DNA of 64,000 bases from positions 124,001 through 188,000 of IMG/VR virus record IMGVR_UViG_3300007513_000001. One strand, given 5' to 3'. The notes under the pieces were generated by a model. It had not been told where the DNA came from, made no database searches, and saw only the letters and a program-made list of their open reading frames with translations. Below are positions 3,082 through 31,138 of the stretch, piece after piece; the stretch's first letter is position 1; each line of letters begins with the position of its first letter. The translations under genes were made by a program, and so were the position numbers.

Positions 3082-6000
3082 AAAGGGATTTTAGAAGATC
3101 AGAAATTCCTGATCTTAATCAAAATTTTCGAAATTATCGTAGCGGTGCATCTCTTTTAGCGCATTATGTTTTTGGTCAATATGATTCTAATACTGGAACT
3201 ATTGAAAATATAGCTAAGGGCAGCAGCTATGCTGCGTTGACTTATGAATCGTCAGTTGATCCTATTACTGAGTCAGTGTATGGATCGCCCTACGTAGGAA
3301 AAACTGATCTAAGATCATTTTCTTTTAAAAAACTTAGAAAACAAAGTGTTAGATTAGTTTATTCAGCGACTGGACTAAGTTCTAACCAAGCGCCTGTTAC
3401 TATAGCTGGCTGGGCCAGAATGCCATCTTTAGACGGAGACGGTGATGCCACGCTCAGCATATTTACGAGTGTTACGGCTGGATCTACTTATAGTGAAAAC
3501 GTTACAGGAGCTTTAAAGTTTACTTATAGACCATCAATAAGCAAATTTTCTTTTTCTATATCTGGTGTCGATTCAAACGGCTCAACAACTACGCTGGTTT
3601 TACCAACTAGAGTAATTCAAAGTTTTAAAAATTCTAAAGCTATAATGGGCGGTAAATGGTTTCATTTTGCAGTAAACATTTCAAATAGTTTAACTAATGG
3701 TGTTAGCGCAGACGATTTTATTTCTTCTCACACCAGTATTTACATTAACGGAGAGAAAGTCGCTGACGGCTCCAACGCAACAGGCGGTGACGGCACATCT
3801 GGAAATAAACTTGCTGGTAATTTTACTATAGCTAATTTATCTACAGATTTAATATTTGCCAAAGGGCCAAGCGACACTGGATTATTAGCTAATTTTTCTA
3901 CTTTAGAAATTCATGAAACAGCTATCTGGTCGAAAGTTCTTGGAGCTGTTGAAATAAAGTCTCTCTATGAAGCTGCTATAATGTTTGTTGGGAGCGGTGT
4001 AGTAAGTTTGCCGCCAAGAGTGCAAATTCAAAACGTTTCCAACAATGCTATTGTTAACCCATTAAATATTTCAGTGGCACAAGACATCCGCTTGTTAAAT
4101 ACTAGCTCATTTTTTGATGACACTATATCTAGAGAGTTTGGTAGCGAAATATTCATAAACTATTCTGCCAAAGTTCCCGTCACAAGTTTTTCTCACATAT
4201 ATTCAGGTGTGGCAGAAAATGTTATATTAAATCATCTAATAACTGCTTCAGTGGCCTCTCCTTCACTTCCACCAGACATTTATGTTTCTGCTTCTTTGGG
4301 ATCTGCGTTCTCTGCTTCGCACAATGTTTCGACTGGCTCCGGTATTTGGAGTGATGAAACTATTAACAGGGCAGATTTTACAGCAATTAATTATGGAGAT
4401 AATTCCGATCGGCGATATTCGTATCTTAACAATTCTAGGCCGAGTGGCTTTATATTTCCATCTTACGGAAGAGGGTATAGTTGGAATACTTCTAAAACCC
4501 CAGCTCCGTATGAGCCGTTTGTAGATTCTGCAGTAACGTTTGATAAGTGGAACCAGGTTTGGACGAAAGATTCTAAAATAGGGTTAACTTTTAGTGCTAG
4601 TCTTGATGCGCCAAGAACAGATCGAAGAATCGTATCTATTCCGTTTACGAACCTCAGCACGAAAAATCTTAGAAGATACGATGCTGGCGCAGAAGATCAG
4701 GACTACGACGGTTTCAAAGGCGCGGGCAACTCTGCAACAGCATCGACTACGGGATTTTGTTTTTTCGACTGGAAGCAGGGCCGGTGGGCAGACAAAGGAG
4801 ACGGCCTTGCAGACGGAACTAATGGTATATACCATTTTAGGTTAATAGCTGAAAGATTCTATCGGTGGAATTGGCTTACGCAATCAGTAGACCCAGGTGA
4901 TCTTTCATCACCATCCTACCCAAGTAACAACTCGACGTTCTACCTATCTGAGTCATACATAGACGGCCGAGGTTCTGGCGGACCAACTATGCCAATCTAC
5001 AAAAGGGATCCTGTCCCCGGCCAAGTCTGGAGAAAATGTTCGCCGCCAATAGCTGGTTTTGATAGTATACCAAGACAATTTTTCCCTGGTTTCAAAGATG
5101 TAGATAGCTTGTTTAGCAGCCGCTCTTATGCAGAAAGCATCAAAATGCCGGCTTTCTTAACATCGAATAAATATGCTGGACACCCTATGGTTCAATACGG
5201 TGCACCGCAAGACACGAGATATTATGCTCCTGATACGCAAGTTATAGATACTTCTAATTACTTAGCGGCTCCATTCATGCTTGAAAAAATAATATTAGAG
5301 CTTCCCGTTGAAGGGATACGAACCTACTCTAATAAAGATAGATATCCAGGAAATGCATATCCGCAAGATGATTATGTGTTTTTCTTATATAGACAAGAAA
5401 GAAATAATCCTGTGTCTTCTAAGGAAACTTCAACCGCAATCCAGGGAGTGCTCTCTGCGAGCAATAGATATTTAATATGCAGCGGAAACGTTGCTGTTTA
5501 CGCCAACGATTGCTGGGATTCGGATTCGAGATCTGTAAATCCATACGGTGGCGCCCCAGTCGGTCTTCGAGGTAAATCTTACACAGACCATTTTTATGAC
5601 ACAGAAACAGGCGCAACCAATCAATTTTCTCCAGTAAATAGCCCAGATCAGGCTTTACCATTATTAAAATGGAAACTTACTGGGGACCCATTTAACACTG
5701 TTCAAGATATAAAATGGAGCGATAAATATCTTTATTATGGATATCCATCCGCTTTCGCTGGTAGCACCCCGGCAAAAGAAGTAACTACGGGCGAAACTAA
5801 TGTAGTTATTTCAATGACGCCGGCAGTTGCGCCAAAGAGAAGATATGGTAGATTTTGGGAACACACTCAAGTTTTAAAAGTTTATTCTGGAAATTATGAA
5901 CAATTGTCTAAATATGGAAGGCTGTACTACCCGGGAGGAGGGGGAACTTACCGTATCCCAGTGAATAATCAAACAGCTATCAGAGACTCCGAAGGCTTAA

Positions 6001-8678
6001 ATATTAACAAATCTTTTCTTTTTGCTTCTTCGGCGATAAGTGCTCGAAACCCCAACGCTAATATAATGACGATGCCTACCGATATATCGTCTTCTTTAAA
6101 TTATAATTGGTGCGCTCCTGTATGGTCAGTCCCTGGCGGTGCGACATACCCTCAGGGCACTCTTGGACCACAGCCCGTAAATGATAGTGGCGCCCCATCC
6201 GGATATAATGTTAGCGCAAATGGTAATTTTCAATTTAAACATTTTGATATTACTAAAGATCCCACTTTTGCACCAAAATCAGATCCAACTAGCAAGAAGT
6301 GGGTAACCGTTATTCCAGGTGAAGTCCCGCCTGATTTCAATAGGGGAATGCCTGTTTTCTGCACTTGGCTAGGTGGAACGTCTACAGTAGGATTCCACCA
6401 GATCAACGAGGGGATAAGAGAACCATCGTTAGTTAAAACTTACCTGACTAAAAAATCTGCAGCCTCAGCAACTCCTTGGTATGGACAGCGTTTTCCATAT
6501 TCAAAACCACCTGTTACTCTTACACCGCTCGGCGTGATAACAGCTTCAAACGAAACATATTTTAATTATTCTAATGAGCCATTTTCTGCAGTTCCCAATA
6601 GGCACCCTAATGCGTTTTTTGAAATAAATCAATTAAACGAAGTTAATACTAAAAGATATTTTTCTGCCGAAGTTAACGATCCAAGAACCGTTAATCACTC
6701 TTTTTCTCATAGATACACACCATATAGAGAAACGGTTTCATCTTCTTTCTTTTCTGGATCTATCGGAGTCGACGATTTTTATGCAACAGCTAGAGATTTT
6801 GATATTGTTTGGAATAGTACGAGATTAAAATTTGATCCACCGCCTGCAGCTTCATCTACAGAAACTGGATATCTACTTTTTCCAGGAGACGAATTAATAC
6901 TTGGCGTCGAAGCAGCGATCGCTGCTCCTTCGTATTATTGCTCTGGAAGTATAACTTGCATAACAGGGTCTTATCTAAAGTTACTGCCCGGGGATTGCAA
7001 GATTACACTGGTCGGATCTTATGTTAAAGACAAAAAGAGAGTTTTAAATAATTCAGCTCAACAGCTATTAAATGCTAATGCTTCATTTGCGATCGGAATG
7101 GATATTGTCACCGATCAGTTTGAAATAGAGTCTAGAGATTCATATACTGGAAATTTCTTATCTCAAGAAATGTCAGGTGCCGTCGTTACACCGGTGGCCA
7201 AGTCCCCGATACAACCATCGACTATTGCAGTTCATCTCCCGCCATATGGCGCTTACCTGAACGGCAGAACTGTTTTAGAATGGCCAGGAATGGAAAATTT
7301 CCGAAACTACAGAAAAGTAGTTTCGGAGACACTCTATGAAAATATGGGAGATACATATGCATTCAATCGATTTGTTAAACTTTCTCAAAGCGGCTCTCTG
7401 TTTTATGATAGTTTAGTCCCCAATGTTCAAGATTTATGGGCGTCTTATACGCCATTCCAAATAGGGTATAATCCCAGTACGGTAACGCCCGTTCTTGGAA
7501 TGACGTTATCTCCAGGTCCAGATGGAATAATTGATACGCGTCATAAACTTTCTGCATTTGGAACTATTTCTAGAGCTTGGCTCCAAGCTCTTTGGCCAGG
7601 AGCTAAAGGAAGCGCTGATGTAATGAATCCAAGACAGTCTGAAATATTTTTAGAAGCTTATAACGAAAACTGGAATAATTCTTTTCCCTATGAGCCAAAA
7701 TATACCAGAAAGATGAAAACTGCAGATGGTGAAGTATTGACTATTCTGCCAACAAGAAATTCAGAGCAGAAGTTTGTAGGCGTGGCAAATGCTCATGACG
7801 GAAATGGCCCATCGCTCAGCCTTCAGCGGGGTATGGTTGGAATAGTTACCCCTCTTAAGATGACGAATGTAAATAATCTGCTTCCAGATCCTGCTAGCCC
7901 GAGAGCTGGAGTAGATCAAGTTAACTTTTTAGATTCTCCCGGTTTAATAATGTGTTCTCCTAAAAAGAAGTCTAAAGGCTCAGTTCCTTATGTTGCAGGC
8001 ACAACCGCAGCCGGCTCCCCCCCAGACATAAATGCCTTTAGGAATGCTTATTTGGCACCAAACCATAAATTTTGGTATCGCTCAGATGACTCTAAGATGC
8101 TTTTGAAATATCTTTACGGAATAGAAACTGGAAATGATTTCTTCGCAACAAGAACTTATACTTCTGGAGCAGCGCTACAGGATTCTAGAGAGTATATGAT
8201 GGGAGCTAGCACCGGTATAATACGTTGCCCTTATGCTCCATCACCGAGAACTTATCCATACTATCATCAAAAATTTATGACTACTAAACCCAGAGGCTGG
8301 AAATATGGAGTGATGAATGCACTTCCAATCGCGCCTTCCGCTATTTTCCGTGGTAATAGGTTCGGGCAGTTTAGAGATATGTTAGAACAGAGAAGAGATT
8401 CGGTGGTTTTCAATGTTGGAGGAGAAAGTGTGGACTTTTCCACACTTCCAGTTGTTGTTACTTTTAAAGAGCCATCTTGGAAGACGAATTTAACTGATCC
8501 TGGAGGCGAAGTATCTGTTTCTCCAGAAGAAACACACAGCTCCAATCTAAGCTTGTACGCCACTAGTTCTGTTCCATATTTTGACGATCCAAAACAAGCT
8601 CAATATCCTACTGGCCGAAATAGATCTTCTGTATGTGATTTTAGAGATTATGTTGAAGTTACAACTGACACGGAATAA
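3078..8678 (+). CDS. Large structural protein (1866 aa) with N-terminal LamG/ConA-like beta-sandwich; putative baseplate or receptor-binding protein
   Basis: LamG-like signatures TIAGWARM...GKWFHFAVNI...TSIYINGEKV...EIHETAIWSKVLGAVEIKSLY. Confidence 0.65.
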   Translation: MKRDFRRSEIPDLNQNFRNYRSGASLLAHYVFGQYDSNTGTIENIAKGSSYAALTYESSVDPITESVYGSPYVGKTDLRSFSFKKLRKQSVRLVYSATGLSSNQAPVTIAGWARMPSLDGDGDATLSIFTSVTAGSTYSENVTGALKFTYRPSISKFSFSISGVDSNGSTTTLVLPTRVIQSFKNSKAIMGGKWFHFAVNISNSLTNGVSADDFISSHTSIYINGEKVADGSNATGGDGTSGNKLAGNFTIANLSTDLIFAKGPSDTGLLANFSTLEIHETAIWSKVLGAVEIKSLYEAAIMFVGSGVVSLPPRVQIQNVSNNAIVNPLNISVAQDIRLLNTSSFFDDTISREFGSEIFINYSAKVPVTSFSHIYSGVAENVILNHLITASVASPSLPPDIYVSASLGSAFSASHNVSTGSGIWSDETINRADFTAINYGDNSDRRYSYLNNSRPSGFIFPSYGRGYSWNTSKTPAPYEPFVDSAVTFDKWNQVWTKDSKIGLTFSASLDAPRTDRRIVSIPFTNLSTKNLRRYDAGAEDQDYDGFKGAGNSATASTTGFCFFDWKQGRWADKGDGLADGTNGIYHFRLIAERFYRWNWLTQSVDPGDLSSPSYPSNNSTFYLSESYIDGRGSGGPTMPIYKRDPVPGQVWRKCSPPIAGFDSIPRQFFPGFKDVDSLFSSRSYAESIKMPAFLTSNKYAGHPMVQYGAPQDTRYYAPDTQVIDTSNYLAAPFMLEKIILELPVEGIRTYSNKDRYPGNAYPQDDYVFFLYRQERNNPVSSKETSTAIQGVLSASNRYLICSGNVAVYANDCWDSDSRSVNPYGGAPVGLRGKSYTDHFYDTETGATNQFSPVNSPDQALPLLKWKLTGDPFNTVQDIKWSDKYLYYGYPSAFAGSTPAKEVTTGETNVVISMTPAVAPKRRYGRFWEHTQVLKVYSGNYEQLSKYGRLYYPGGGGTYRIPVNNQTAIRDSEGLNINKSFLFASSAISARNPNANIMTMPTDISSSLNYNWCAPVWSVPGGATYPQGTLGPQPVNDSGAPSGYNVSANGNFQFKHFDITKDPTFAPKSDPTSKKWVTVIPGEVPPDFNRGMPVFCTWLGGTSTVGFHQINEGIREPSLVKTYLTKKSAASATPWYGQRFPYSKPPVTLTPLGVITASNETYFNYSNEPFSAVPNRHPNAFFEINQLNEVNTKRYFSAEVNDPRTVNHSFSHRYTPYRETVSSSFFSGSIGVDDFYATARDFDIVWNSTRLKFDPPPAASSTETGYLLFPGDELILGVEAAIAAPSYYCSGSITCITGSYLKLLPGDCKITLVGSYVKDKKRVLNNSAQQLLNANASFAIGMDIVTDQFEIESRDSYTGNFLSQEMSGAVVTPVAKSPIQPSTIAVHLPPYGAYLNGRTVLEWPGMENFRNYRKVVSETLYENMGDTYAFNRFVKLSQSGSLFYDSLVPNVQDLWASYTPFQIGYNPSTVTPVLGMTLSPGPDGIIDTRHKLSAFGTISRAWLQALWPGAKGSADVMNPRQSEIFLEAYNENWNNSFPYEPKYTRKMKTADGEVLTILPTRNSEQKFVGVANAHDGNGPSLSLQRGMVGIVTPLKMTNVNNLLPDPASPRAGVDQVNFLDSPGLIMCSPKKKSKGSVPYVAGTTAAGSPPDINAFRNAYLAPNHKFWYRSDDSKMLLKYLYGIETGNDFFATRTYTSGAALQDSREYMMGASTGIIRCPYAPSPRTYPYYHQKFMTTKPRGWKYGVMNALPIAPSAIFRGNRFGQFRDMLEQRRDSVVFNVGGESVDFSTLPVVVTFKEPSWKTNLTDPGGEVSVSPEETHSSNLSLYATSSVPYFDDPKQAQYPTGRNRSSVCDFRDYVEVTTDTE

Positions 8679-21043: not shown

Positions 21044-22000
21044 ATGGCCGGCATATTAGACAACAAAACTCGAGTAATGGACGTTATAATCACTCCGCTC
21101 GGAAGATCTCAGATGGCTTCTGGTAGGATGAAAATTGAATATGCATCTTTTACAGACAGACAGATTATTTATGAATCTGGTTCTTCAGGAGCTCTTTTAG
21201 ATTTAACAGATAATCTCTATTTTGAAGCTTCTCATACTGAAAATGATCAAATAATTTATGAAATTGATCCCGACGGCAATCTTGCGCCATTTCAGTCTGG
21301 AGAGTATGTAATAAACGGGCAAGATGTTACATTTACGACTGGGTCTGCTCAGGGTGCAGCTTATACCGGATCAATTGATTTAATATCGGAAACTATTTGC
21401 AATAATGCTACAGATCATTTTAGGGCTCAAAGAATTATTGGCACCAGAGACCTCTTCAAAGAAGACAAAGGGGCAACATTTAAAATAAATCCAACTACTG
21501 CATCATTTTATGTCTCCGACGACGGTCCTTTAAACGAAGACGAAGATTTAACTAGTATTTCTCAAGATGATGTAGAATGTGTCTTTCAATCTTCTATGTT
21601 TTCTCACTTACCAAATTTTAAATATTTGCCCCCTATGTCTAAACCGCATCTCGACGCTCCGGACGGAGCAGTCTTAGCTGAATATACTCAAATTAACGGT
21701 GTGGGAACAACCGAGTGGTCTACTGTTGAAAGTTATCTCTCAAAATACGATTATCAAACTATAGACTTTGAAGAAACTTCTGGAGAAAATAATATACTGT
21801 GCCAAATTTTTGAAGAAATTTCTGATAGTAGCTCAGGTGGCACCTTGGAAAAACTTTCCGTAATAGATTATGGTACTTTTAATATAGAGTCAGACAGGTC
21901 AGCTCACGTATTTTTTGTGGGTAAGTTATTTAGAGATTCAGTAGGGTCTTTATGTTTCGCAAATTTGATGACTTTAGTATTTGACGATGAGGCAGACTAA
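21044..22000 (+). CDS. Putative baseplate/tail structural protein; N-terminus paralogous to 33005..33709
   Basis: N-terminus MAGILDNKTRVMDVIITPLGRSQMASG..KI...FTD..I.Y aligns with MGFLDHSTNNIIVDAVLTDIGRKKLAEG..SI....GD..V.Y. Confidence 0.55.
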   Translation: MAGILDNKTRVMDVIITPLGRSQMASGRMKIEYASFTDRQIIYESGSSGALLDLTDNLYFEASHTENDQIIYEIDPDGNLAPFQSGEYVINGQDVTFTTGSAQGAAYTGSIDLISETICNNATDHFRAQRIIGTRDLFKEDKGATFKINPTTASFYVSDDGPLNEDEDLTSISQDDVECVFQSSMFSHLPNFKYLPPMSKPHLDAPDGAVLAEYTQINGVGTTEWSTVESYLSKYDYQTIDFEETSGENNILCQIFEEISDSSSGGTLEKLSVIDYGTFNIESDRSAHVFFVGKLFRDSVGSLCFANLMTLVFDDEAD

Positions 22001-25000
22001 TGGGTGGATTCGGTGATTCGATACTTGACTCAGAGGGCGACGGGTCTTCTGGTACAGACAGCGATAGTGAAACTTTCACTCCAGAGACTCACGGTCGAAC
22101 TTTCGCTGAGCCCGGTGGGCCCACCTCGGGCCCCGGTGGGTACACTACTCCCGGGGGCACGACGGGCACCGATGAAGGAAGCTGTGTTATAGAGGGAACG
22201 CTAATTCAAACTCAAAGAGGCTCTATACCTGTTGAGTGGGTTGAGCTTGGAGATAAAGTATATTCTTATGATTTTGATTCTTGTAAATTCGGGTATTTCG
22301 AAGTCTTAGAAATTTTACTACCTGTTAAAAAAGCTTCATGGTTTAAAATAACTACGGCTCTTGGATATACTCTTAGTTGCACAGCTGATCACCCTATTTT
22401 TAGTACTAGCATAGAATCTGGTGAGCTTCCAGTGTCAGAAGCTGAAATAGGAGATCCAGTTTATGTTTTTCAAGATGGAGAAATTGTTAAAGATTTCTTA
22501 GTTTCAAAAGAAAAAATAATCGAAGAAACGATAGTATATAACTTTGAAATCGATATCGTTCATTCTTATTTTAGTGATGGCATCCTTTCCCACAACGCTG
22601 GCACCAAAGGCAGAACTGCAGAAGAAACTATGGAATCTGCCACTGACGCAGCTAGCGCTTCTAGTAAATCGACGTGGCTTGGCGAAGTCGCAGACACCAC
22701 TTCAACGTTCGTGTCGGCAGGGAGGGTCATGGGTGGCTACTATGCCATGGACGCAGCAGATGGCTCAGAGTTATCCACAACAATACCGACCGAAGTGGAC
22801 GGGTGGTCCGGCTCAAGCTATTATATTAATAGTGATGTCGGTCCCTGTATTACTGATATGAAAATAGATTTAGTCGGGACCGATGCAGATTCTGGCAGAA
22901 GTAATTACTTGATGACTCTAGAGTGCACCGCTTGGATAAGAGAGATAGATTTATACAACATTGGCGTTTCCACAGTAGTCGGCCAGCTTTGCAAAAGCTC
23001 TGGTGGAACCACAGCTGATTATTTTTCTTCTGTAGATCCATCTTCTGCCGATGTTATATTTTCGACAATGTCTACGGGTGGACCAGGTCAAGAATTCGTA
23101 GACGAAATTGAAGAAACAGATTATTCTGTAGTTGAAGTATGCAGCGATTGGCCATCTGATCCAGGTATAGTGTTCGGTGACAATATTTCTCTCGATTCGA
23201 GCCACCGTCTTTCGCTTGAATACAACCAAAGAGATACTGCCACTAACGTATTGTTGGAAGCAAGCGCTCTTTTAGAGAGAAGCGGTGACTCTACACCTAC
23301 GCTGATCAATTCTCTTATGGAATTCAATATAGATCCAGCCCTGATAGGCACACTTCAATCTCCAATAGAGACTTGGGAACAATATTATGCAGGGACCCTT
23401 TCGCCGTCCGGCCTGTATACAGTCGAAGGACATGAGTATAGAACACAATATCGATTGTTATATGAGTACCAAGATAGTTTAACTGAGGTTAGCAGCCCCG
23501 TGGCCGCAGGTATTCGTAGTACTTCGCTAAACTTAGCGTATACTCCAATGAAGTTTTATTTTGTTGGATCTATGAGTGACACTCAATTTGAAGATTTCGC
23601 TAGTGACGATTTATTTCTTCGACTTACGTATGTTGCTAGTCCAATGGGTACTTTTACTGAAGCTGATTTAACTTCAGATTTAAAACAAGGGGCCACTAGC
23701 GTTTCATTAGACATACAGGCCGCAGCTAGGGGATATTTTGCTAGAGATTTTGAAACAGTTAACATTAGCGTAGATTCAGCAAACGCTGAAAGACCTTATG
23801 ATATTATTGAATTAGTAAATCCGAATCCGTTTTATGTAAATTGCACAGTAGAAGAAATATCTTATCTTCCGTCCTATGAAAGAACAGCTCAAACTGTGAA
23901 AATGGAACCACTTTCTACCACTTCGATCCATTCACTCAATAATTATCAATTAACTGACACTAGATTTTATAGGTGTGCAGCAACAAGCGCTTTAGATACA
24001 GAGATACAAGTTTACGACGCTGCTGAGTTCAACTCTTGGACCAGGTCAGTATGTATAGCGAGAGCGGATGTATCTATAGACTCTAATGGAGATACTTGGT
24101 TTATTAATTTGCCATCATCATGCACTAAAATAAAGTGGGTAGCTTTTGAAAAGGGAAAAGAAGGAGCTACCGGAATTGAAAAATCGGTACCCTCTCAAAA
24201 TACGATTTATAAAGGGACTATATCTGTTACTACTGAAGAACAAATATCATCATCGTTCACGCGGCGACTCGATATAGGATATGGTAACGGCGCAACTTAT
24301 ACTGTCGAATTTATTTTTCAAGATTCGGATGGTACTATGTTGGGATATTGGGATGCTGCGTATACTACTGCGAGAACTTTTATGGACGCACCAGTGCAGC
24401 CGATTTCTTTTGCGGTAGTGTACGATGCAGATGAGTCGACTGGCTCTGTTAGCATCACCATAGCCGAAGCGATATCTTCTAATTTAACAAGCGAATATAT
24501 GACCGCAGCTACATTTGGAAGCTCTGGTGGAGCGTGGCAGTCAGAAGTAGAATCGATAAAAAATAATGCTGGTATGGTTACAACTTATACAATAACACGC
24601 CAAGATTGTATTACTGGCGAAGAAGAAGTTTTGTCGTCAAATGCCATTGCGGGAGCTACGACTTCATATTCTATTAATAGCGGTGGAGAGTCTAGTAGAA
24701 AAGTAAAATTTAAAGTTGCTCTAAAAGTTGCTTCGTTAGCCGCAGCTTCTGAACAAACAGCAGTCACAACAAAAGAAACAAGGAGTGGAGTAGGAGACGT
24801 GCAATTTGCTTATTTAGCTCAAGAATTAAACTGGCCGCAACTTTTCTACGGCGCAGCTAATCCTGGCCAAGTGTATGGTTTAACAGATTATTTTGAGCAA
24901 CTTTATACGCAAAAAGAAGTTTATTTCACCATAGACCCTAGAGGAGAACTTTCTACCCCGTATGTTATTTCTGTAGATGTAGAAAGAAGCCTAATAGCGC

Positions 25001-25332
25001 AAGCTAATATTGTTACTGTTACGGTTGGTGGAACTTTAGATGAAATAGATCATATTATTTTATATTTGGATCACAATGGTGTTGTCGCTCCTTATAAAGT
25101 CGGCTCGCCGCTGAATTCTAAAGTAGTGTTTGTAGATAAAGACCACTACGATTCGATTGGATACCTATATTATAGGGCCTCTATTTTCTTTGGCACAGAT
25201 AAAACTTATACTCCGGCGAGCGACAGTCCCGCGGGACAAATATTTAGATATAGCGATATCGACTTAAATACAGCTTCCGATGGAATTTGGGGAAGTACAG
25301 ATACCATAGAATCGCTAGAAGGAACGGGGTGA
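22000..25332 (+). CDS. Acidic structural protein (1110 aa) with an N-proximal Hint (intein-like) domain
   Basis: Hint blocks CVIEGTLI (A), SCTADHPIF (B) and VYNFEIDIVHSYFSDGILSHN (F/G). Confidence 0.75.
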   Translation: MGGFGDSILDSEGDGSSGTDSDSETFTPETHGRTFAEPGGPTSGPGGYTTPGGTTGTDEGSCVIEGTLIQTQRGSIPVEWVELGDKVYSYDFDSCKFGYFEVLEILLPVKKASWFKITTALGYTLSCTADHPIFSTSIESGELPVSEAEIGDPVYVFQDGEIVKDFLVSKEKIIEETIVYNFEIDIVHSYFSDGILSHNAGTKGRTAEETMESATDAASASSKSTWLGEVADTTSTFVSAGRVMGGYYAMDAADGSELSTTIPTEVDGWSGSSYYINSDVGPCITDMKIDLVGTDADSGRSNYLMTLECTAWIREIDLYNIGVSTVVGQLCKSSGGTTADYFSSVDPSSADVIFSTMSTGGPGQEFVDEIEETDYSVVEVCSDWPSDPGIVFGDNISLDSSHRLSLEYNQRDTATNVLLEASALLERSGDSTPTLINSLMEFNIDPALIGTLQSPIETWEQYYAGTLSPSGLYTVEGHEYRTQYRLLYEYQDSLTEVSSPVAAGIRSTSLNLAYTPMKFYFVGSMSDTQFEDFASDDLFLRLTYVASPMGTFTEADLTSDLKQGATSVSLDIQAAARGYFARDFETVNISVDSANAERPYDIIELVNPNPFYVNCTVEEISYLPSYERTAQTVKMEPLSTTSIHSLNNYQLTDTRFYRCAATSALDTEIQVYDAAEFNSWTRSVCIARADVSIDSNGDTWFINLPSSCTKIKWVAFEKGKEGATGIEKSVPSQNTIYKGTISVTTEEQISSSFTRRLDIGYGNGATYTVEFIFQDSDGTMLGYWDAAYTTARTFMDAPVQPISFAVVYDADESTGSVSITIAEAISSNLTSEYMTAATFGSSGGAWQSEVESIKNNAGMVTTYTITRQDCITGEEEVLSSNAIAGATTSYSINSGGESSRKVKFKVALKVASLAAASEQTAVTTKETRSGVGDVQFAYLAQELNWPQLFYGAANPGQVYGLTDYFEQLYTQKEVYFTIDPRGELSTPYVISVDVERSLIAQANIVTVTVGGTLDEIDHIILYLDHNGVVAPYKVGSPLNSKVVFVDKDHYDSIGYLYYRASIFFGTDKTYTPASDSPAGQIFRYSDIDLNTASDGIWGSTDTIESLEGTG
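22183..22596 (+). other. Hint / bacterial intein-like (BIL or PT-HINT type) autoprocessing domain, 138 aa, no homing endonuclease
   Basis: Starts at Cys62 (TGT 22183), has the TxxH motif, ends His-Asn (22591-22596); the +1 residue is Ala. Confidence 0.85.
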
Positions 25333-25336
25333 ATAA

Positions 25337-28300
25337 ATGTCTGGCACTAATGACTCTACTAATTTTAATTTATGGACTACAGATAATCTAAGCACTACTA
25401 GCGGAGAATCTGCAGTTGATATTTCAGCTTCTAGCGTTGCTTTGGATTCATCAGTCAGTGATATTCCAAGTACGACTAATTCTTCTTCTGGGCTGTCTAC
25501 TACATCTGCAACGATTGATAATGCGGGCACAAATAGAATGCTGACTGAAGTGTTACTTAATCCATTACGCCCAGAGCTTTTAGCAATTTTAGACCTAAAG
25601 TCTTTTAAAGAGTCATCTGATGGTGGCCTGACTCGCACCGATAGTTCTTTTTATGATTACGCCGTAGCAAAACTTGCAGTAAGAGCGTCTGATGCATCGA
25701 CAGTTGCAGAAACTATAGAAAGTCTTTCTACTAGTTATCCAGATGAATTTAGGTCTGCGCTGGCGCAATATGAAACTTCACTTTCTTCTTCTTCTAGCGA
25801 AATAGAGATGCTTAAGCTAGCGTATATGCTAAAACAATATGCTATTTTAGGACCAAATTTTCGTGATTTTTTAGAGATCTTTGATTTCGAAGGTTCAACT
25901 AGCGTAGACCTTGGTCTTGTCACAGATGACGAATACAACGTTTATGATTATTATAGAAAAGTTTTTGGAATTCGAGAGGATGACGATATTTACGTTCCTA
26001 GTAGTACGTTTTTTGCTGAAGCAATTCAACAAACTGCTTTTATGACAGTTATTGGTGCCCCCTATACTATCATGGGCTTTGATCTCAAATCATATGATTC
26101 CGATCTCCGCCCCACAATGTCCCGCAGTTATGTCGGGTGGTCTAATAATTTTGCACTTCCTGAATCTTCAGGCCCCGGCAAATATAACGTTTTCCGCCGC
26201 GGCGGACGATCTACGGAGATGGGTAATATCTCAACCATGCGCCGCGGCGGAAATAGGGGATATTTAGATGCTGAGCGGGCTGTCAGAATAAGAGTTGCCG
26301 TATACAATTCTTTAGATGGTGAATCAGAAAACGCATATCAATCTAAGCATTATCCGCACACTCAAGTATTTTCTTCTATATTGGGAAATAATTTAAACTC
26401 AAGCTATGTAGTAAAACAATGCCAAAAAACCGATGGAGCTTTTGACACTGTTTTGTGGAGCATATTAAAAAAGAAAGCGGGCGCGATCGTTAACACTTCT
26501 TTTTCTACACCTGGAGCGTCAATTTTTAAAAGCTTGGCTGGTTGGGATCCATATTTACAGACACGCTTTAATTCTTCAAAACTGGAAGATGATTCGTTGA
26601 TTAATAGACAGTTTTTACCTGATTTGACCATGTTCGAAAATGGAATTATGGGAGCTGCTTTTGAAGAAAATGAATGCTATGTAGAAAAATGTAAGGTTCA
26701 ATACACAAGCGACACAGGAGACACTGTAGAAACTTCTTCTATCAGAAAAACAATCAATGAAGCTTTTGGTAGTGTAGACGGATCAATATCTTTTGGTGAT
26801 TATGAATCGATTGCAAATAACTTGAGTTCTGCTTGCAAGGATTTTGGCAAAGCGATGGGAAAAATGCATCGATCTGGTAAATACCAAAACTTAAACAAAG
26901 CAGAACAAAATGCTCCTATGAATAAGGGTATTTTTAAAAATTATCCACAGACAGCTTTTGACCCAGGCTCTGTATTTAGCGCGTGTCTTGAGACATTCAA
27001 AGAGAGATTTGCAGAAAATTTTGAAGAATATTATCTTTGGTATGGATTTCAGTTAGATCCAACAATCCCAGACGCATCCACTTCATGGCCCAGGGGAATG
27101 CACGCCACAAGCACTGAAAACATGCTTGGCATGTTCAGTCAACCAGATCCACATCATATTAAAAGGTTTGCTTCTTTGATGGCGTACGGAATAATAAATT
27201 CTGATGACCAAGTAGGAAACAATAACGCAAGATGTTTCGGCCTCGCTATAGCTAAACAAATAGCGGGAGCTTTTGTTGGAGACTTTTATAAAGGCCACTT
27301 AACATTCAGCAACGAAACTGAGGAAGTTGTAGAATTTGAAACCGTTACGTCTACAGATAGCGAAGGGAATCCAACCACAAGCGTACAAGAAACTAAATTC
27401 ATGGCAAAAGTGAACGCCAATCCACTCACTGGCGCGCCAGCGTCGTTAAGAGGCTCATCAAGCGGGGTTTGGGGTGTTTTAGTTCCTCCTAAAGATTTAG
27501 TCGCTTCAGATGGGTCGATAATGAAAAATGTTGCAGATATGAATGTAGACACCGATAAGGCGACAGTCAGCTCAGATTATTTAGCTATCTATCAAAGATC
27601 TGCACACGGTAATGGTTTCATAGCAGATAATGCTTTTGCTGGTGAATCGCTGGGCGGAACCAATTTTTCCGATATGCAGCTGTCTGGCTGGATGCAGTGG
27701 GCCCCATGGTTTAATCCAGAAGCAGATAATATATACGGTGGCGGAGCTCACTTTTTTACCAAACAGTTCTGCTCTTTACGCTCAGCCGGAGGGGGCGGCC
27801 AAGCCTATCTCAAGGATAAGTTCGATGAGCTCTTAGAGTCTTCTTATCAAGAAGCAGAAATCTCTTGGGGCGCTGACACCCTCCACGCGAGCGGTAAGAC
27901 TTTTACTCCCAAGGACTCTCTTTTTGAAGCTTGCAACATGTGGAAATATTCTTGGCATTGGGCGAAAGATTTCCACGAAGAGTCAGATGTTCCTTACATT
28001 CCACTTTTGGCAAATTTATGGGCTGCTGAAATGATAGAGATGTGTTTATTGACTTTTAGAAAAATTTTAAAAACAAGAGGACATAATATTGGACCAGCAA
28101 GCCCAGCTGATCTTTGTTTTCCATTCGAAGCTAATACAGCTCCATATACAGACTCGGGTGGATATGCAGATATAATAATGGACAACTTAGAACGAGTTGG
28201 CGAAACGGATTGTGAAGATTTTCCAGCCAGCGAGTGTTTCTGGCAGGCTGAGGCGCACGATCAAGATTATTCTACTGGGATTGGGTTTAGATACTGGGTA

Positions 28301-31138
28301 CCAACAATGAGATCTATCCACGAGAACTTTTGTAATGATGATGGTACTTTAGCTGCTACTGGAAAACCATTAGCAGAAATATTCGGCCATATTATTGATA
28401 ATATGGCAATGATAATGAAGCAGACTTATCCATTTTTTCATGTTGCTTATATACAATGGGAAGGGGTTGGTACCTCAAATGCCTATACGCGTTTTCCAAT
28501 ACTCGGAAATTATCACAACATGGTAGACGGAGATGCTGTTGCATCTGGAGAAACTCGAGAAAAAGTCGGCGCGCCCGTTTATCCCAGGATGCTGTACCCC
28601 TATTACAATTCCCACCACGATGATGCACTCGACAATGACAAGTTGTTGAAATACACTGACCACCTCGTTGAGCAATGGATTGAAATGAACCTGAGACAGA
28701 ACGACGATACCGCGACACATCTTGCAGTCGATATGCAAAATGTGACAACTAGCTGGTATGGTATGGAACAGACTGACTCGAATAAGATAGGCGAGGGCGT
28801 GGGTACCGCCATCAGCGGCGAACGAAGCCGTACGGGTGACACGATTAGATCAAATTTTGTTGGCGAAGAGGTTATATGGAACCGCGTTACTTTTCCAGAA
28901 ATTCTTGAAGCCGATGATATTATTTATTGGGATTCTACTTCGAATCACGACGACCAGGATATTTCATTAATAGATTTTTCTGTGCTTTTTGCCTTGACAG
29001 GAAACACGAGTTTAGATTCATTCGCGGATTCGGAAGTAAACGATCTCACAGACTTCACCGGAAGAGCTAGGTGGATAAAGGGAGGCTATTATAATAGCGA
29101 CGACGAAAACGTCGATGCATGGGGAGACATCATCTCATCTGGAGATACCGGTATGACGCCTCGCGCTTTTTGGGTGCCATGGTATATAGCTGCGATTCCC
29201 ACTATTATTGAAAAGCTACTAGAGTTAGAAATAACTCCTGCTGATACTGGTGCGCTCTCTTATACTTCATCTGATAGTGTTCTACAACGAATGATGGGTG
29301 GATTGGTTGAAAACAGTTCGGGGATATATAGTTTTGGAGATGACGGGATATTATTGGGTGTAGCCCCAATGTTATCTTTAACAGGCTACACCCCTTATTT
29401 AAACTCTGGAGGCACCGGGCCGACCGGTTATGCTGGCGTCGGTGGCCTGGGTCAAACAGGTAATGGGGGTGATGCTCGATTTGGTGGCACAGTCACCAAC
29501 GGCCATCTCCGATACATAAATAATTATATAAATAAGCTTTGGAGAGGTTTGATTTTATCCTGTAGAGAACCATATTTTAAAGCTATAGCTTTTAATTTGT
29601 TTGATAAGTTCGGCGAAAGAATCGAAGATTATTCTGGCACCGCTATTAAAGCTTTTAACAGAGACGGCGATGCGAAGAACCTCGAGCCGGTGGTTGAATA
29701 TATTAGTGATCTTATAGAGTCAGGCGAAGCTGGTGCCGATATATTGCAGAATTTAACAGATCAGCAGATGGCTTTGAAATATTTATCTTTTTATCGTCAG
29801 AAAGGAGATAGCAGCAGTGGATTGATACCAGCACAAGAGACCATAGACTCTAAATTAATGGCGGCAATTAATTTAATGTTTGACACCCGTGATATGTCAA
29901 AAGAGGGTTTGAGAACGTTGTGTTTTGGTATACCTGCTACCGGCGTAGAAGAGTTTGATGATTCCTCAAGTGCTAGTAATACCCTGGGTGGCTCTAGATA
30001 TATCCCACAAAACATGTGGATAGGAATTACAGGTTACAATTTTGAATACCCTCAAGTGTCACTAGAGCCCATTTGCATACCTTTTAATGCCAATTTGTTC
30101 GTTGTTACTGAAAGTTTTGAAGACTTAACTATTGAAGATATATTGTCTTATGGATCGATTAGCGATATAAGAGATAATATGAAATTCTTAAAAGCAGAAT
30201 TAAGCGTACAAGAAGGCGAAGGGGAATCGACTCAAATAATAGTGAATGATGACGTTAGGATTGCTACTTTATCTGATTTGTATGGAGATGATTTAAATGA
30301 TAGAATTCTTGTATCAGCATACCATATTCTAAGAAGCTATTTGTTAGAAAATTATTATAGGATAGTTTTAGGTGTCAGCATAAATGAAGACACATTCCCA
30401 AGCACCTCAGAAGAACTTGGTCTAGGAATTAATGATTATGCTTCTAATTTTGCTGAAGCTCTTTCATCTGAATTTTCATCCTACAATTCTGGAGTTTCAT
30501 CGGCAGTTTCTCAAGTGATGAGCTCATTATCAACTTCAGTTTCAAATTACAATACAATCGCTTCTGGATTTAGCACAACGTTGGGAGCAACTAGATTTGA
30601 AGATCTTTCAGATGAAATTTTAGATTCTGCCACTAATGCTGTGGGGTCAAGATTATATACTGCGGAATCTATGCGGCAGCAAATTATCGGAGCTAAGAGA
30701 TTTGATAGAGTTATATTTTTCCCATTTCATCCAGACGATTTTTGCGTACGCTGGGAAAACTCAGTGGGCACAACTGCGGGATCTCCAGCATGGGATGATA
30801 TGGTGCCTTATACTACTGGTGATGATGTCAGAGAATTGATAGGCTACCGCTTCACTGGCGAAACCGAGACCGCCGTCACTTTAGACGATGAGGGCTGGAT
30901 TTTAACTACCGGAGTAGAAGAAGCTGCAGACGGTGATGACACTGTACAAGAAAGTGATTATAATAATCTTTATGATAATATGCTCTTCAGCTACTCCGGT
31001 CTCGTGGAATACAGTTCCTGGGGCACTGTGATTGACACAGGGATAAAATTTAAAGCTCGTGACGGTGAAAATAGTATTAATTTCTTTAGAGCTTCCGTAA
31101 TTATATACGACGGAAATACGTTGGGAGACGATGCATAA
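25337..31138 (+). CDS. Giant acidic hypothetical protein (1933 aa), probably virion-associated
   Basis: Long ORF coupled to its neighbours in the structural cluster; no catalytic motif recognised. Confidence 0.55.
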   Translation: MSGTNDSTNFNLWTTDNLSTTSGESAVDISASSVALDSSVSDIPSTTNSSSGLSTTSATIDNAGTNRMLTEVLLNPLRPELLAILDLKSFKESSDGGLTRTDSSFYDYAVAKLAVRASDASTVAETIESLSTSYPDEFRSALAQYETSLSSSSSEIEMLKLAYMLKQYAILGPNFRDFLEIFDFEGSTSVDLGLVTDDEYNVYDYYRKVFGIREDDDIYVPSSTFFAEAIQQTAFMTVIGAPYTIMGFDLKSYDSDLRPTMSRSYVGWSNNFALPESSGPGKYNVFRRGGRSTEMGNISTMRRGGNRGYLDAERAVRIRVAVYNSLDGESENAYQSKHYPHTQVFSSILGNNLNSSYVVKQCQKTDGAFDTVLWSILKKKAGAIVNTSFSTPGASIFKSLAGWDPYLQTRFNSSKLEDDSLINRQFLPDLTMFENGIMGAAFEENECYVEKCKVQYTSDTGDTVETSSIRKTINEAFGSVDGSISFGDYESIANNLSSACKDFGKAMGKMHRSGKYQNLNKAEQNAPMNKGIFKNYPQTAFDPGSVFSACLETFKERFAENFEEYYLWYGFQLDPTIPDASTSWPRGMHATSTENMLGMFSQPDPHHIKRFASLMAYGIINSDDQVGNNNARCFGLAIAKQIAGAFVGDFYKGHLTFSNETEEVVEFETVTSTDSEGNPTTSVQETKFMAKVNANPLTGAPASLRGSSSGVWGVLVPPKDLVASDGSIMKNVADMNVDTDKATVSSDYLAIYQRSAHGNGFIADNAFAGESLGGTNFSDMQLSGWMQWAPWFNPEADNIYGGGAHFFTKQFCSLRSAGGGGQAYLKDKFDELLESSYQEAEISWGADTLHASGKTFTPKDSLFEACNMWKYSWHWAKDFHEESDVPYIPLLANLWAAEMIEMCLLTFRKILKTRGHNIGPASPADLCFPFEANTAPYTDSGGYADIIMDNLERVGETDCEDFPASECFWQAEAHDQDYSTGIGFRYWVPTMRSIHENFCNDDGTLAATGKPLAEIFGHIIDNMAMIMKQTYPFFHVAYIQWEGVGTSNAYTRFPILGNYHNMVDGDAVASGETREKVGAPVYPRMLYPYYNSHHDDALDNDKLLKYTDHLVEQWIEMNLRQNDDTATHLAVDMQNVTTSWYGMEQTDSNKIGEGVGTAISGERSRTGDTIRSNFVGEEVIWNRVTFPEILEADDIIYWDSTSNHDDQDISLIDFSVLFALTGNTSLDSFADSEVNDLTDFTGRARWIKGGYYNSDDENVDAWGDIISSGDTGMTPRAFWVPWYIAAIPTIIEKLLELEITPADTGALSYTSSDSVLQRMMGGLVENSSGIYSFGDDGILLGVAPMLSLTGYTPYLNSGGTGPTGYAGVGGLGQTGNGGDARFGGTVTNGHLRYINNYINKLWRGLILSCREPYFKAIAFNLFDKFGERIEDYSGTAIKAFNRDGDAKNLEPVVEYISDLIESGEAGADILQNLTDQQMALKYLSFYRQKGDSSSGLIPAQETIDSKLMAAINLMFDTRDMSKEGLRTLCFGIPATGVEEFDDSSSASNTLGGSRYIPQNMWIGITGYNFEYPQVSLEPICIPFNANLFVVTESFEDLTIEDILSYGSISDIRDNMKFLKAELSVQEGEGESTQIIVNDDVRIATLSDLYGDDLNDRILVSAYHILRSYLLENYYRIVLGVSINEDTFPSTSEELGLGINDYASNFAEALSSEFSSYNSGVSSAVSQVMSSLSTSVSNYNTIASGFSTTLGATRFEDLSDEILDSATNAVGSRLYTAESMRQQIIGAKRFDRVIFFPFHPDDFCVRWENSVGTTAGSPAWDDMVPYTTGDDVRELIGYRFTGETETAVTLDDEGWILTTGVEEAADGDDTVQESDYNNLYDNMLFSYSGLVEYSSWGTVIDTGIKFKARDGENSINFFRASVIIYDGNTLGDDA

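What the first reader, a model, noticed from the sequence alone, without database searches (positions are those of the whole stretch)
22000..22810. Hint domain ending HN-Ala near the N-terminus of a structural-region protein: self-cleaving or ligating module rather than an intein
Seen: a 61 aa acidic Gly/Pro/Thr leader, then a 138 aa Hint domain with intact Cys1, TADH and terminal HN, but Ala at +1 and no endonuclease, followed by ~910 aa. The Hint DNA is AT-rich while both flanks (about 22080-22180 and 22600-22810) look GC-richer. Established: canonical splicing needs Cys/Ser/Thr at +1; BIL, PT-HINT and Hedgehog Hint domains instead mostly cleave or transfer the N-terminal part to another nucleophile. 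Inference: autoprocessing during assembly or infection that frees a new N-terminus (AGTKG...) and could attach the 61 aa leader to another molecule via the thioester.
Basis: partly seen in the sequence, partly recalled or inferred. Interest (0 to 1): 0.62.

Follow-up and report, generated by a model that had tools for sequence, protein, structure and literature searches.

The report
Intein-like self-processing domain, phage tail-region protein
A large protein of an uncultured marine giant phage, probably part of the virus particle, carries near its start a small intact self-cutting Hint domain of the known "bacterial intein-like" type, which cannot splice like a true intein and most likely cuts itself and a short leader off the mature protein.

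Summary
ORF 22000-25332 (1110 aa) has a 61-aa acidic Gly/Thr/Ser leader. A 138-aa mini Hint domain follows (C62, T128-A-D-H131, H198-N199), then Ala200 and 911 more residues.

The domain folds confidently (pLDDT 88). Its best structural and sequence matches are bacterial intein-like (BIL) domains and mini-inteins.

It belongs to a large metagenomic family. Of 179 complete copies, 178 keep Cys1 and 178 keep His-Asn, but only 8 have Cys/Ser/Thr at +1. None of the 33 closest copies do. That profile is type-A BIL, not an intein.

Two syntenic orthologs carry the Hint at the same place, with +1 Val or Ala. A third lacks both leader and Hint and starts with a region that resembles the post-Hint linker.

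The Hint is twice as conserved as the rest of the protein. It has no indels, dN/dS is 0.14-0.23, and its tree matches the host gene's. So it is an old, selected resident rather than a recent insertion.

The GC contrast is real, but it comes from Gly/Ala/Pro-rich flanks. The Hint itself has ordinary GC for this genome.

Most likely the domain self-excises, leaving a mature N-terminus at A200. Splicing or transfer of the leader remains possible. No biochemistry was done. This is a new member of a known kind in a little-described setting.

The parts
21044..22000 (+). Upstream 318-aa gene. Its stop overlaps the target's start codon (TAATG). It is syntenic in all orthologous loci.
22000..25332 (+). 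Target ORF, 1110 aa (P0001): leader, Hint, low-complexity linker, conserved body.
22000..22182 (+). 61-aa acidic Gly/Thr/Ser/Pro leader (the N-flank of the Hint), net charge -10, with Ser at -1. Only the first ~12 residues resemble the 17-20-aa leaders of the orthologs.
   Evidence: A strain variant carries a 3-nt insertion after 22169.
22183..22596 (+). 138-aa mini Hint domain of the type-A BIL kind. Cys62 is at 22183-22185, T128-A-D-H131 at 22381-22392, block F VYNF at 22534-22545, and His198-Asn199 at 22591-22596.
22597..22599 (+). Ala200, the +1 residue. It has no side-chain nucleophile. It is the predicted mature N-terminus after Asn199 cyclisation.
22597..22842 (+). Variable Ser/Ala/Thr/Gly-rich linker (residues 200-281), GC-rich because of its amino-acid composition.
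22843..25329 (+). Conserved body (residues 282-1110), 27-36% identical to the orthologs. FN3-like beta-sandwiches lie at about 24046-24378 and 24949-25251. It is probably a virion (tail or baseplate periphery) protein whose exact role is unresolved.
25337..31138 (+). Downstream 1933-aa gene, syntenic in the Hint-bearing orthologous loci (2021-2023 aa there).
3078..8678 (+). 1866-aa ORF of the same gene block. Its homologs in other phages (P0030, P0040, P0051, P0117) end with a Hint of this family, three of them followed by a 26-45-aa tail. The window's copy lacks that module.

Best explanation
Residues 62-199 are a genuine mini Hint domain with its catalytic residues intact. It is of the bacterial intein-like type A kind: Cys1, block-B Thr-x-x-His, block F/G ending His-Asn, and no nucleophile at +1.

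It sits in the disordered N-terminal region of a 1110-aa FN3-rich protein. That protein is probably a virion component of an uncultured marine 293-kb T4-like phage. The domain has been inherited with the gene and is under stronger purifying selection than the rest of the protein.

Inferred mechanism, by analogy with characterised BILs:
1. After translation, Cys62 attacks the Ser61 carbonyl (N-S acyl shift) and forms a thioester.
2. Asn199 cyclises and breaks the N199-A200 bond.
3. With no +1 nucleophile, no branched intermediate forms, so cleavage dominates.

The body is released with Ala200 as its new N-terminus. This matches the natural N-terminus of the Hint-less ortholog. The leader and the Hint are discarded. 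A minor share may be re-joined by attack of the new alpha-amine on the thioester.

Shown: domain identity, residue conservation, family-wide lack of a +1 nucleophile, ortholog pattern, selection. Inferred: that the reactions occur, and which product dominates.
For: **Fold and sequence.**
- The closest PDB sequence is the C. thermocellum BIL domain 2lwy, at E 7.7e-7.
- The AF2 model has pLDDT 88.
- The Foldseek top hits are 2lwy and the Tetrahymena BUBL BIL2 domain, followed by the gp41-1 mini-intein.

**Catalytic residues.** Of 179 complete copies, 178 keep Cys1 and 178 keep His-Asn. The block-B His is invariant in a 30-sequence alignment.

**+1 residue.** Across the family it is K 124, A 18, V 6, M 6, and C/S/T only 8. 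In the closest subfamily it is C/S/T in 0 of 33.

**Orthologs.**
- Two syntenic orthologs carry the Hint at the same site, with Ser at -1 and Val or Ala at +1.
- A third, seen in two independent assemblies, has neither leader nor Hint. It starts at the same TAATG junction. Its first 140 residues (A/S/T/G-rich) resemble the post-Hint linker rather than the leader.

**Selection and descent.**
- Hint identity is 63-81%, against 31-50% for the body.
- The Hint alignment has no indels.
- dN/dS is 0.14-0.23, and synonymous sites are near saturation.
- The three Hints form a clade with the same branching as the host genes, support 95/93.
- A strain variant shows 14 third-position, 10 first-position and 0 second-position changes among the 24 differences listed inside the Hint.

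**Same pattern in another gene.** Homologs of the window's 1866-aa ORF exist with and without a terminal Hint module.

**Known chemistry.** In type-A BILs cleavage products dominate and splicing is minor (PMC4031507).
Against: - No biochemical or proteomic data exist, and the phage is uncultured.
- If only release of the body were needed, Cys62 would not be required. Yet Cys1 and His-Asn are both kept in 178 of 179 copies, whether the Hint sits near an N- or a C-terminus. That hints that the thioester has a use of its own, such as splicing or transfer.
- The first ~12 leader residues are loosely conserved among the three Hint-bearing orthologs.
- The first residues of the Hint-less ortholog (MAGY) could equally be matched to the leader's MGGF.
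- The virion role of the host protein is inferred only. The body model is poor (pLDDT 50.6), and no Pfam or PHROG family matched it.
Confidence: 0.6

Rival explanations
1. BIL-type splicing is the main outcome. After thioester formation and Asn199 cyclisation, the free alpha-amine of Ala200 attacks the thioester. The 61-aa leader ends up joined to the body and only the Hint is removed.
For: - Type-A BILs can splice without a +1 nucleophile by this route (PMC4031507).
- Cys1 and His-Asn are both conserved in 178 of 179 copies wherever the domain sits, as expected if both reactions matter.
- The leader start is loosely conserved in the three orthologs.
Against: - The Hint-less ortholog has no leader-like sequence fused to its body.
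- Leader length ranges from 17 to 61 aa, and the stubs of relatives are unconserved Gly-rich sequence.
- In studied type-A BILs, cleavage products dominate (PMC4031507).
Confidence: 0.15
2. Enzyme-free conjugation. The thioester at Ser61 is resolved by an external nucleophile, such as a lysine of another virion or host protein or a small molecule. The leader is then covalently transferred, as in Hedgehog cholesteroylation or Tetrahymena BUBL ubiquitin-like conjugation.
For: - The BUBL BIL2 domain is among the top structural matches, and it forms Lys isopeptide bonds to other proteins (PMC8616854).
- Cys1 is strictly conserved even in N-terminal Hints.
- Lys is the commonest +1 residue in the family, and a Lys sits at +4 in the three orthologs.
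Against: - The would-be cargo is a disordered, poorly conserved peptide of variable length, with no recognisable domain.
- No acceptor can be named.
- There is no sterol-recognition region and no ubiquitin-like flank.
Confidence: 0.1
3. A catalytically silent or decaying remnant: a former mini-intein that lost its +1 nucleophile and is now tolerated as an extra N-terminal domain of the virion protein.
For: - It sits at a terminus, in a low-complexity region where an extra domain could be tolerated.
- One ortholog does without it.
- The Pfam score is below the cut-off.
Against: - It is the most conserved part of the protein. It has no indels and dN/dS is 0.14-0.23.
- All catalytic residues are intact in three lineages whose bodies share only 31-50% identity.
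- The family-wide profile of C1, HN and a non-nucleophilic +1 is itself conserved.
Confidence: 0.08
4. A conventional, mobile class 1 intein that splices normally.
For: It has the Hint fold, Cys1, TxxH and a terminal His-Asn.
Against: - +1 is Ala, and Val or Ala in the orthologs.
- There is no homing endonuclease.
- It is not inserted in a conserved host motif.
- The Hint-less ortholog also lacks the N-extein.
- It co-diverged with the host gene.
- No Hint-less junction appeared in contigs from four studies.
Confidence: 0.02

Closest known systems
Type-A bacterial intein-like (BIL) domains (Amitai et al. 2003; Dassa et al. 2004; structure 2lwy, C. thermocellum)
   Same: - Hint fold.
- Cys1, block-B TxxH, and a block F with Asn (VYNF in both).
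- Terminal His-Asn and no +1 nucleophile.
- Location in a variable, low-complexity region of a non-conserved protein.
- 2lwy is the best sequence match (E 7.7e-7) and the best structural match.
   Different: - The host is a phage protein, probably of the virion, not a bacterial secreted or surface protein.
- Identity to 2lwy is only 25%.
- The domain is vertically inherited and more conserved than its host protein.
- Activity is untested.
Pretoxin HINT (PF07591) of polymorphic toxins
   Same: It is the best-scoring Pfam model (25.5 bits). Relatives pass its cut-off (P0010 at 34.4 bits; viral copies at 33-86 bits). The proposed role, autoproteolytic release of a flanking part, is the same.
   Different: - This protein scores below the gathering cut-off of 27.7 bits.
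- The domain is N-terminal and followed by a 911-aa FN3-rich body, not placed before a C-terminal toxin.
- No toxin or secretion domain was detected.
Tetrahymena BUBL BIL2 domain (6y75, 6tmm)
   Same: It is a top structural match (TM 0.76-0.80 by target). It is a Hint that resolves its thioester with an amine rather than a +1 side chain (PMC8616854).
   Different: It is flanked by ubiquitin-like domains, and its cargo is a folded Ubl. Here the N-flank is a disordered 61-aa peptide. Sequence identity is 15-17%.
Mini-inteins such as gp41-1 (6qaz) and Ssp/Npu DnaB
   Same: Same fold and size, Cys1, terminal His-Asn, and no endonuclease.
   Different: Inteins have Cys/Ser/Thr at +1, sit in conserved sites of replication or repair proteins, and leave a contiguous host protein. 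None of these holds here.
Peptidase S74 intramolecular chaperone of phage tail fibres and spikes
   Same: Functional analogy only. It is a self-cleaving terminal module on large phage tail proteins rich in low complexity (PMC7824862).
   Different: The fold and chemistry are unrelated (Ser-Lys dyad), it sits at the C-terminus, and it has a known chaperone role.

Membership tests
HINT superfamily | Hint fold (horseshoe beta structure) | tested here: met
   The AF2 model has pLDDT 88. Foldseek gives probability 1.00 and TM 0.75-0.91 (by target) to BILs, inteins and the Hedgehog Hog domain.
Class 1 intein | Cys/Ser at position 1, block-B TxxH, terminal His-Asn | tested here: met
   C62, T128-H131 and H198-N199.
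Class 1 intein | Cys/Ser/Thr at +1 of the C-extein | tested here: not met
   Ala200 here and Val or Ala in the orthologs. In the closest subfamily 0 of 33 copies have a nucleophile.
Class 1 intein | Insertion in a conserved site, so that intein-less homologs show contiguous exteins | tested here: not met
   The domain lies in a low-complexity N-terminal region. The Hint-less ortholog lacks the leader as well.
Type-A BIL domain | Intein-like N-terminal motifs plus C-terminal His-Asn, without a +1 nucleophile | tested here: met
   The definition is taken from PMC4031507 and PMC7765530.
Type-A BIL domain | Located in variable regions of non-conserved proteins | tested here: met
   The flanks are unalignable low complexity, and the host protein has only a few metagenomic homologs.
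Type-A BIL domain | Sequence membership in the family as originally defined | tested here: inconclusive
   No BIL-A profile was on hand. The closest solved sequence is the C. thermocellum BIL, at 25% identity and E 7.7e-7.
Type-A BIL domain | Autocleavage at one or both junctions | not testable with these tools
   This needs expression and mass spectrometry.
PT-HINT (PF07591) | Score above Pfam's gathering cut-off | tested here: not met
   25.5 bits against 27.7. The collection's precomputed table nevertheless lists PF07591 for this protein.
PT-HINT (PF07591) | Sits directly upstream of a C-terminal toxin domain in a secreted polymorphic toxin | tested here: not met
   It is N-terminal, with no toxin domain in the 911 aa that follow.
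Hedgehog Hog domain | Hint followed by a sterol-recognition region, with no Asn-mediated C-terminal cleavage | tested here: not met
   It ends in His-Asn and is followed by a disordered linker.
BUBL-type BIL | Flanked by ubiquitin-like domains | tested here: not met
   The N-flank is a 61-aa low-complexity peptide, modelled at low confidence.

The most novel reading that the evidence does not exclude
In marine giant phages, BIL-type Hint domains at the ends of large virion proteins may act as built-in, ATP-free ligases. The thioester they create would be resolved by an amine of another virion component or of a host molecule. That would covalently cross-link the tail or baseplate, or tag a target. 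It would be a viral counterpart of Hedgehog or BUBL chemistry rather than simple self-removal.
Probability: 0.1. Interest if true: 0.8.

Novelty: new member of a known kind. Interest (0 to 1): 0.42.

Why it matters
[quoted passage not shown] In this case the domain is clearly selected: it is twice as conserved as its host protein, and it recurs at the ends of large phage proteins, including gpJ-like tail proteins in other viral contigs. A natural Hint-less ortholog is available for comparison. Together these give a clean, testable system for asking whether such domains only remove themselves or also ligate. Small Hint domains that need no side-chain nucleophile at +1 are also of interest as protein-engineering tools. 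For genome annotation, the practical point is that the mature protein probably starts at Ala200.

Tried and rejected
**Searches that found little or nothing**
- GenBank phage searches with the whole protein and the surrounding DNA found nothing.
- With the Hint alone they found only 32% identity or less, mostly true inteins in terminases and helicases. No cultured relative exists.
- The upstream 318-aa protein also had no match.
- The word-based protein search returned only the protein itself.
- IMG/VR and JGI scans with the body alone added only P0004's own contig and DNA for the P0003-type ortholog.
- The diverse Hint alignment A3 was too variable for a locus scan. A closer four-sequence alignment worked.

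**Identity of the body**
- AF2 with 7 sequences gave pLDDT 50.6.
- Fold searches showed only generic FN3-like sandwiches.
- Language-model leads to tip attachment protein J scored below 0.9.
- Profile comparison with a gpJ-like viral protein did not confirm those leads (probability 0.2).
- Pfam did not confirm them either.

**Interpretations rejected**
- GC contrast as a mark of foreign origin. The flanks, not the Hint, are the outliers. Orthologs show the same pattern (Hint 0.33-0.34, linker 0.51-0.55). GC3 is raised in the flanks only in this phage.
- A population variant without the Hint. Contigs of four runs from four studies showed no joint skipping 22183-22596, and contigs bridge both junctions. 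Contigs drop rare variants, so this is weak evidence.
- Other Hint copies in this genome. None was found.

**Other**
- The MAFFT alignment that placed the Hint-less ortholog's N-terminus under the Hint is an artefact of low complexity. HMMER finds no Hint in that protein or in its locus.
- The two annotated phage loci that were looked up carried only hypothetical proteins.
- No alternative genetic code was used.
- Read laying was given 4401 letters.
Full report
**Setting.** The window is bases 124001-188000 of a 293,409-bp virus record with direct terminal repeats, rated complete. It encodes these T4-type functions:
- a T4-type portal;
- a large terminase;
- two gp23-like major capsid genes;
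- a head-tail adaptor, a sheath stabiliser and a tail sheath;
- a fused SbcD/SbcC-like nuclease.

The portal is only about 40-43% identical to those of Microcystis phage Mel-JY01 and Flavobacterium phages. The DNA is held by marine and seawater metagenome runs from several studies. The phage is therefore an uncultured, distant T4-like marine jumbo phage.

The target gene lies in a co-oriented run of very large unannotated ORFs between 475 and 37657, ranging from 189 to 2349 aa. The only weak hints in this block are a PHROG 'tail protein' match for the 189-aa ORF and a Laminin_G_3 match for the 844-aa ORF.

- ORF 22000-25332 gives 1110 aa.
- The start codon overlaps the stop of the upstream gene (TAATG) and follows a GAGG.
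- Residues 1-61 are acidic and rich in Gly, Thr, Ser and Pro, with net charge -10.
- Residues 62-199 begin with Cys62, contain T128-A-D-H131 and V179-Y-N-F, and end in H198-N199.
- Ala200 follows.

The segment is a real Hint domain on several counts:
- The best PDB sequence match is the C. thermocellum bacterial intein-like domain 2lwy (E 7.7e-7), followed by the gp41-1 mini-intein.
- An AlphaFold2 model built on 30 family sequences has pLDDT 88.
- Its best Foldseek matches are 2lwy and the Tetrahymena BUBL BIL2 domain, then gp41-1 and DnaB mini-inteins, all at probability 1.00.
- Pfam's PT-HINT model scores 25.5 bits, just under its 27.7 cut-off.
- The genome has no second Hint.

**The family.** An exhaustive HMMER search of 1.84 billion representative proteins found 2086 proteins at E<=1e-3. 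Apart from a few orthologs and fragments, the listed hits share only the Hint.

I cut out the 179 complete copies found in 124 of the best 150 proteins. The counts are:
- Cys at position 1 in 178;
- His-Asn at the end in 178;
- +1 residue: Lys 124, Ala 18, Val 6, Met 6, and Cys/Ser/Thr only 8.

In the closest subfamily, which ends in Ser-His-Asn (33 copies), none has a +1 nucleophile. There the domain usually lies 26-100 residues from the C-terminus of proteins of 1200-2750 aa. Less often it lies 17-61 residues from an N-terminus.

The short stubs beyond the domain are unconserved and Gly-rich.

This residue profile is the published definition of type-A BIL domains. They have intein-like motifs with terminal His-Asn and no +1 nucleophile. 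They occur in variable regions of non-conserved proteins. Cleavage products dominate, and splicing by attack of the freed alpha-amine on the thioester is minor (PMC4031507; PMC7765530).

**Orthologs.** Three related host proteins were found.
- P0003 (1098 aa) and P0004 (1142 aa) carry the Hint at residues 18-155 and 21-158. Both have Ser at -1. Their +1 residues are Val and Ala, and their leaders are 17 and 20 aa.
- P0006 (961 aa), with a 99%-identical copy from an independent assembly, has no Hint and no leader.

Gene order is the same in all loci: a protein of about 690 aa, one of about 175-189 aa, one of about 320 aa, then the target. In the Hint-bearing loci a protein of about 2000 aa and one of about 600 aa follow the target. 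Each target starts at the stop of the ~320-aa gene.

In the Hint-less locus the start is at the same TAATG junction, and no frame of the 13.9-kb locus encodes a Hint. Its first 140 residues (A 18%, S 15%, T 14%, G 10%) resemble the linker that follows the Hint in the other three. They do not resemble the leader (G 26%, T 18%, S 13%, D 10%, P 8%).

So leader plus Hint behaves as one N-terminal add-on. The Hint-less protein begins roughly where the predicted cleavage product would begin.

**Selection and history.** Pairwise figures:

| Pair | Hint identity | Body identity |
|---|---|---|
| Window vs each ortholog | 63-64% | 31-33% |
| The two orthologs | 81% | 50% |

- There are no indels in the 138 Hint codons.
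- Hint dN/dS is 0.14-0.23, and synonymous sites are near saturation.
- In a tree of 42 Hint copies the three form a clade (support 95/93) with the same branching as the host genes.
- Contigs from four runs in four studies showed no joint that skips the Hint.
- A diverged strain variant shows 24 listed differences inside the Hint, of which 14 are at third, 10 at first and none at second codon positions.

The domain is therefore an old, vertically inherited part of the gene and its most constrained part. It is neither a recent insertion nor a decaying remnant.

**The GC contrast.** It is real: leader 0.60, Hint 0.34, next 214 nt 0.556, genome 0.394. The Hint is at the 12th percentile of genome windows, while the flanks are in the top 0.1-1%.

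The orthologs show the same pattern (Hint 0.33-0.34, linker 0.51-0.55). [quoted passage not shown]

The contrast follows from Gly/Ala/Pro/Thr-rich codons in the flanks. GC3 is raised in the flanks only in this phage, which I leave unexplained.

**A wider theme.**
- Homologs of the window's 1866-aa ORF (3078-8678) in other phages end with a Hint of this subfamily. In three of them (P0030, P0040, P0051) a 26-45-aa tail follows it. The window's copy stops just before that point.
- A related phage contig carries the Hint inside a 2022-aa protein of the same kind of gene block.
- A scan of IMG/VR gave 52 complete copies, of which only 3 have Cys at +1.
- One 1681-aa viral ORF has two N-terminal Hints followed by FNIII-A_GpJ and Phage-tail_3 domains.
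- A 1798-aa viral ORF has a Hint upstream of a Phage-tail_3 domain.

So BIL-type Hints recur in large phage proteins, some of which carry recognised tail-protein domains.

In the paper library I found no description of Hint or BIL domains in phage virion proteins. A broad jumbo-phage review names only the S74 autopeptidase for such proteins. Absence from that library does not prove the association is new.

**The host protein.** The body model is poor, at pLDDT 50.6. Its better-modelled parts match FN3-like sandwiches at model residues 484-594 and 785-885 (Z about 10, rmsd 2.0-2.6 A over 83-94 residues). The viral structure library returns FN3-rich phage tail proteins only at very low TM-scores.

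Language-model leads to tip attachment protein J scored below 0.9. Profile comparison and Pfam did not confirm them. I call the body a probable virion protein, of the tail or baseplate periphery, by inference only.

**Mechanism.** The main reading is self-excision:
1. A thioester forms at Ser61-Cys62.
2. Asn199 cyclises and breaks the N199-A200 bond.
3. The body is released starting at Ala200.

The Hint-less ortholog and the disposable look of leaders and stubs support this.

One point counts against pure cleavage. Cys1 and His-Asn are each kept in 178 of 179 copies whichever end of the protein the domain sits at. That fits better if the thioester has its own use.

Two such uses are possible. 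One is BIL-type re-ligation of the leader. The other is transfer to another amine, as shown for the BUBL BIL2 domain (PMC8616854).

I give about 0.6 to cleavage-dominated self-removal, 0.15 to splicing, 0.1 to conjugation, 0.08 to an inactive domain and 0.02 to a true intein. Only expression with C62A and N199A controls plus mass spectrometry can decide.

**Verdict.** Its ligation idea remains open. This is a new member of a known kind (type-A BIL or PT-HINT-like) in a little-described setting, and it is of moderate interest.

Noticed in passing
P0008, P0011, P0024, P0045 (hits): Proteins of 850-1100 aa carry 2-5 tandem N-terminal Hint domains separated only by Lys-Gly-Gly (…VHN-KGG-CFLPGT…), followed by Tim44-like domains. 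What such arrays yield after processing is unclear.
   Followed up: partly
L025-L037 (IMG/VR contigs), e.g. L025:7624-9384: Viral ORFs of 587 and 916 aa end with a Hint followed by a single Lys and then the stop codon (…YLVHN-K*). Asn cyclisation there would release only one residue.
   Followed up: partly
L048:7955-12997 and L039:6934-12327: Tail proteins of other viral contigs carry BIL-type Hints. The L048 ORF has two N-terminal copies followed by FNIII-A_GpJ and Phage-tail_3 domains. The L039 ORF has one copy upstream of a Phage-tail_3 domain. In L039 the neighbouring 438-aa ORF has a Hint too.
   Followed up: partly
window 3078-8678: This 1866-aa ORF has homologs (P0030, P0040, P0051, P0117) that end with a Hint, in three of them followed by a 26-45-aa tail, after the conserved motif SS-C/V-PY-x-D. 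The window's copy lacks that module.
   Followed up: partly
window 52269-54167 and 54261-56150: Two adjacent gp23-like major capsid genes (632 and 629 aa). The Gp23 match covers only the C-terminal ~270 residues, so each has a long N-terminal extension of about 350 aa.
   Followed up: no
window 39199-42330: A single 1043-aa ORF joins a Metallophos (SbcD/gp47-like) domain to an SMC/SbcC (gp46-like) part. A 1049-aa counterpart lies in the related contig L008.
   Followed up: no
window 22450-22490; protein P0005: P0005 is a 225-aa database fragment that matches residues 1-178 of the target at 98% identity and then diverges into unrelated sequence. One run shows short contigs with loose ends at 22453 and 22487. 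These are probably assembly breaks or chimeras in the AT-rich Hint.
   Followed up: no
window 22115-22518: A strain variant in an independent marine run has a CGA insertion after 22169 in the leader and about 15% nucleotide divergence across part of the Hint.
   Followed up: partly
L006:5929-9148: In the contig of the Hint-less ortholog, no gene is called for 3.2 kb downstream of the target. The Hint-bearing relatives have a gene of about 2000 aa there.
   Followed up: no
window 22000-22182 and 22597-22810: Third-position GC is 0.52 in both flanks of the Hint, against about 0.30 for the rest of the gene. The orthologs do not show this (0.27 and 0.39), so amino-acid composition alone does not explain it.
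   Followed up: partly
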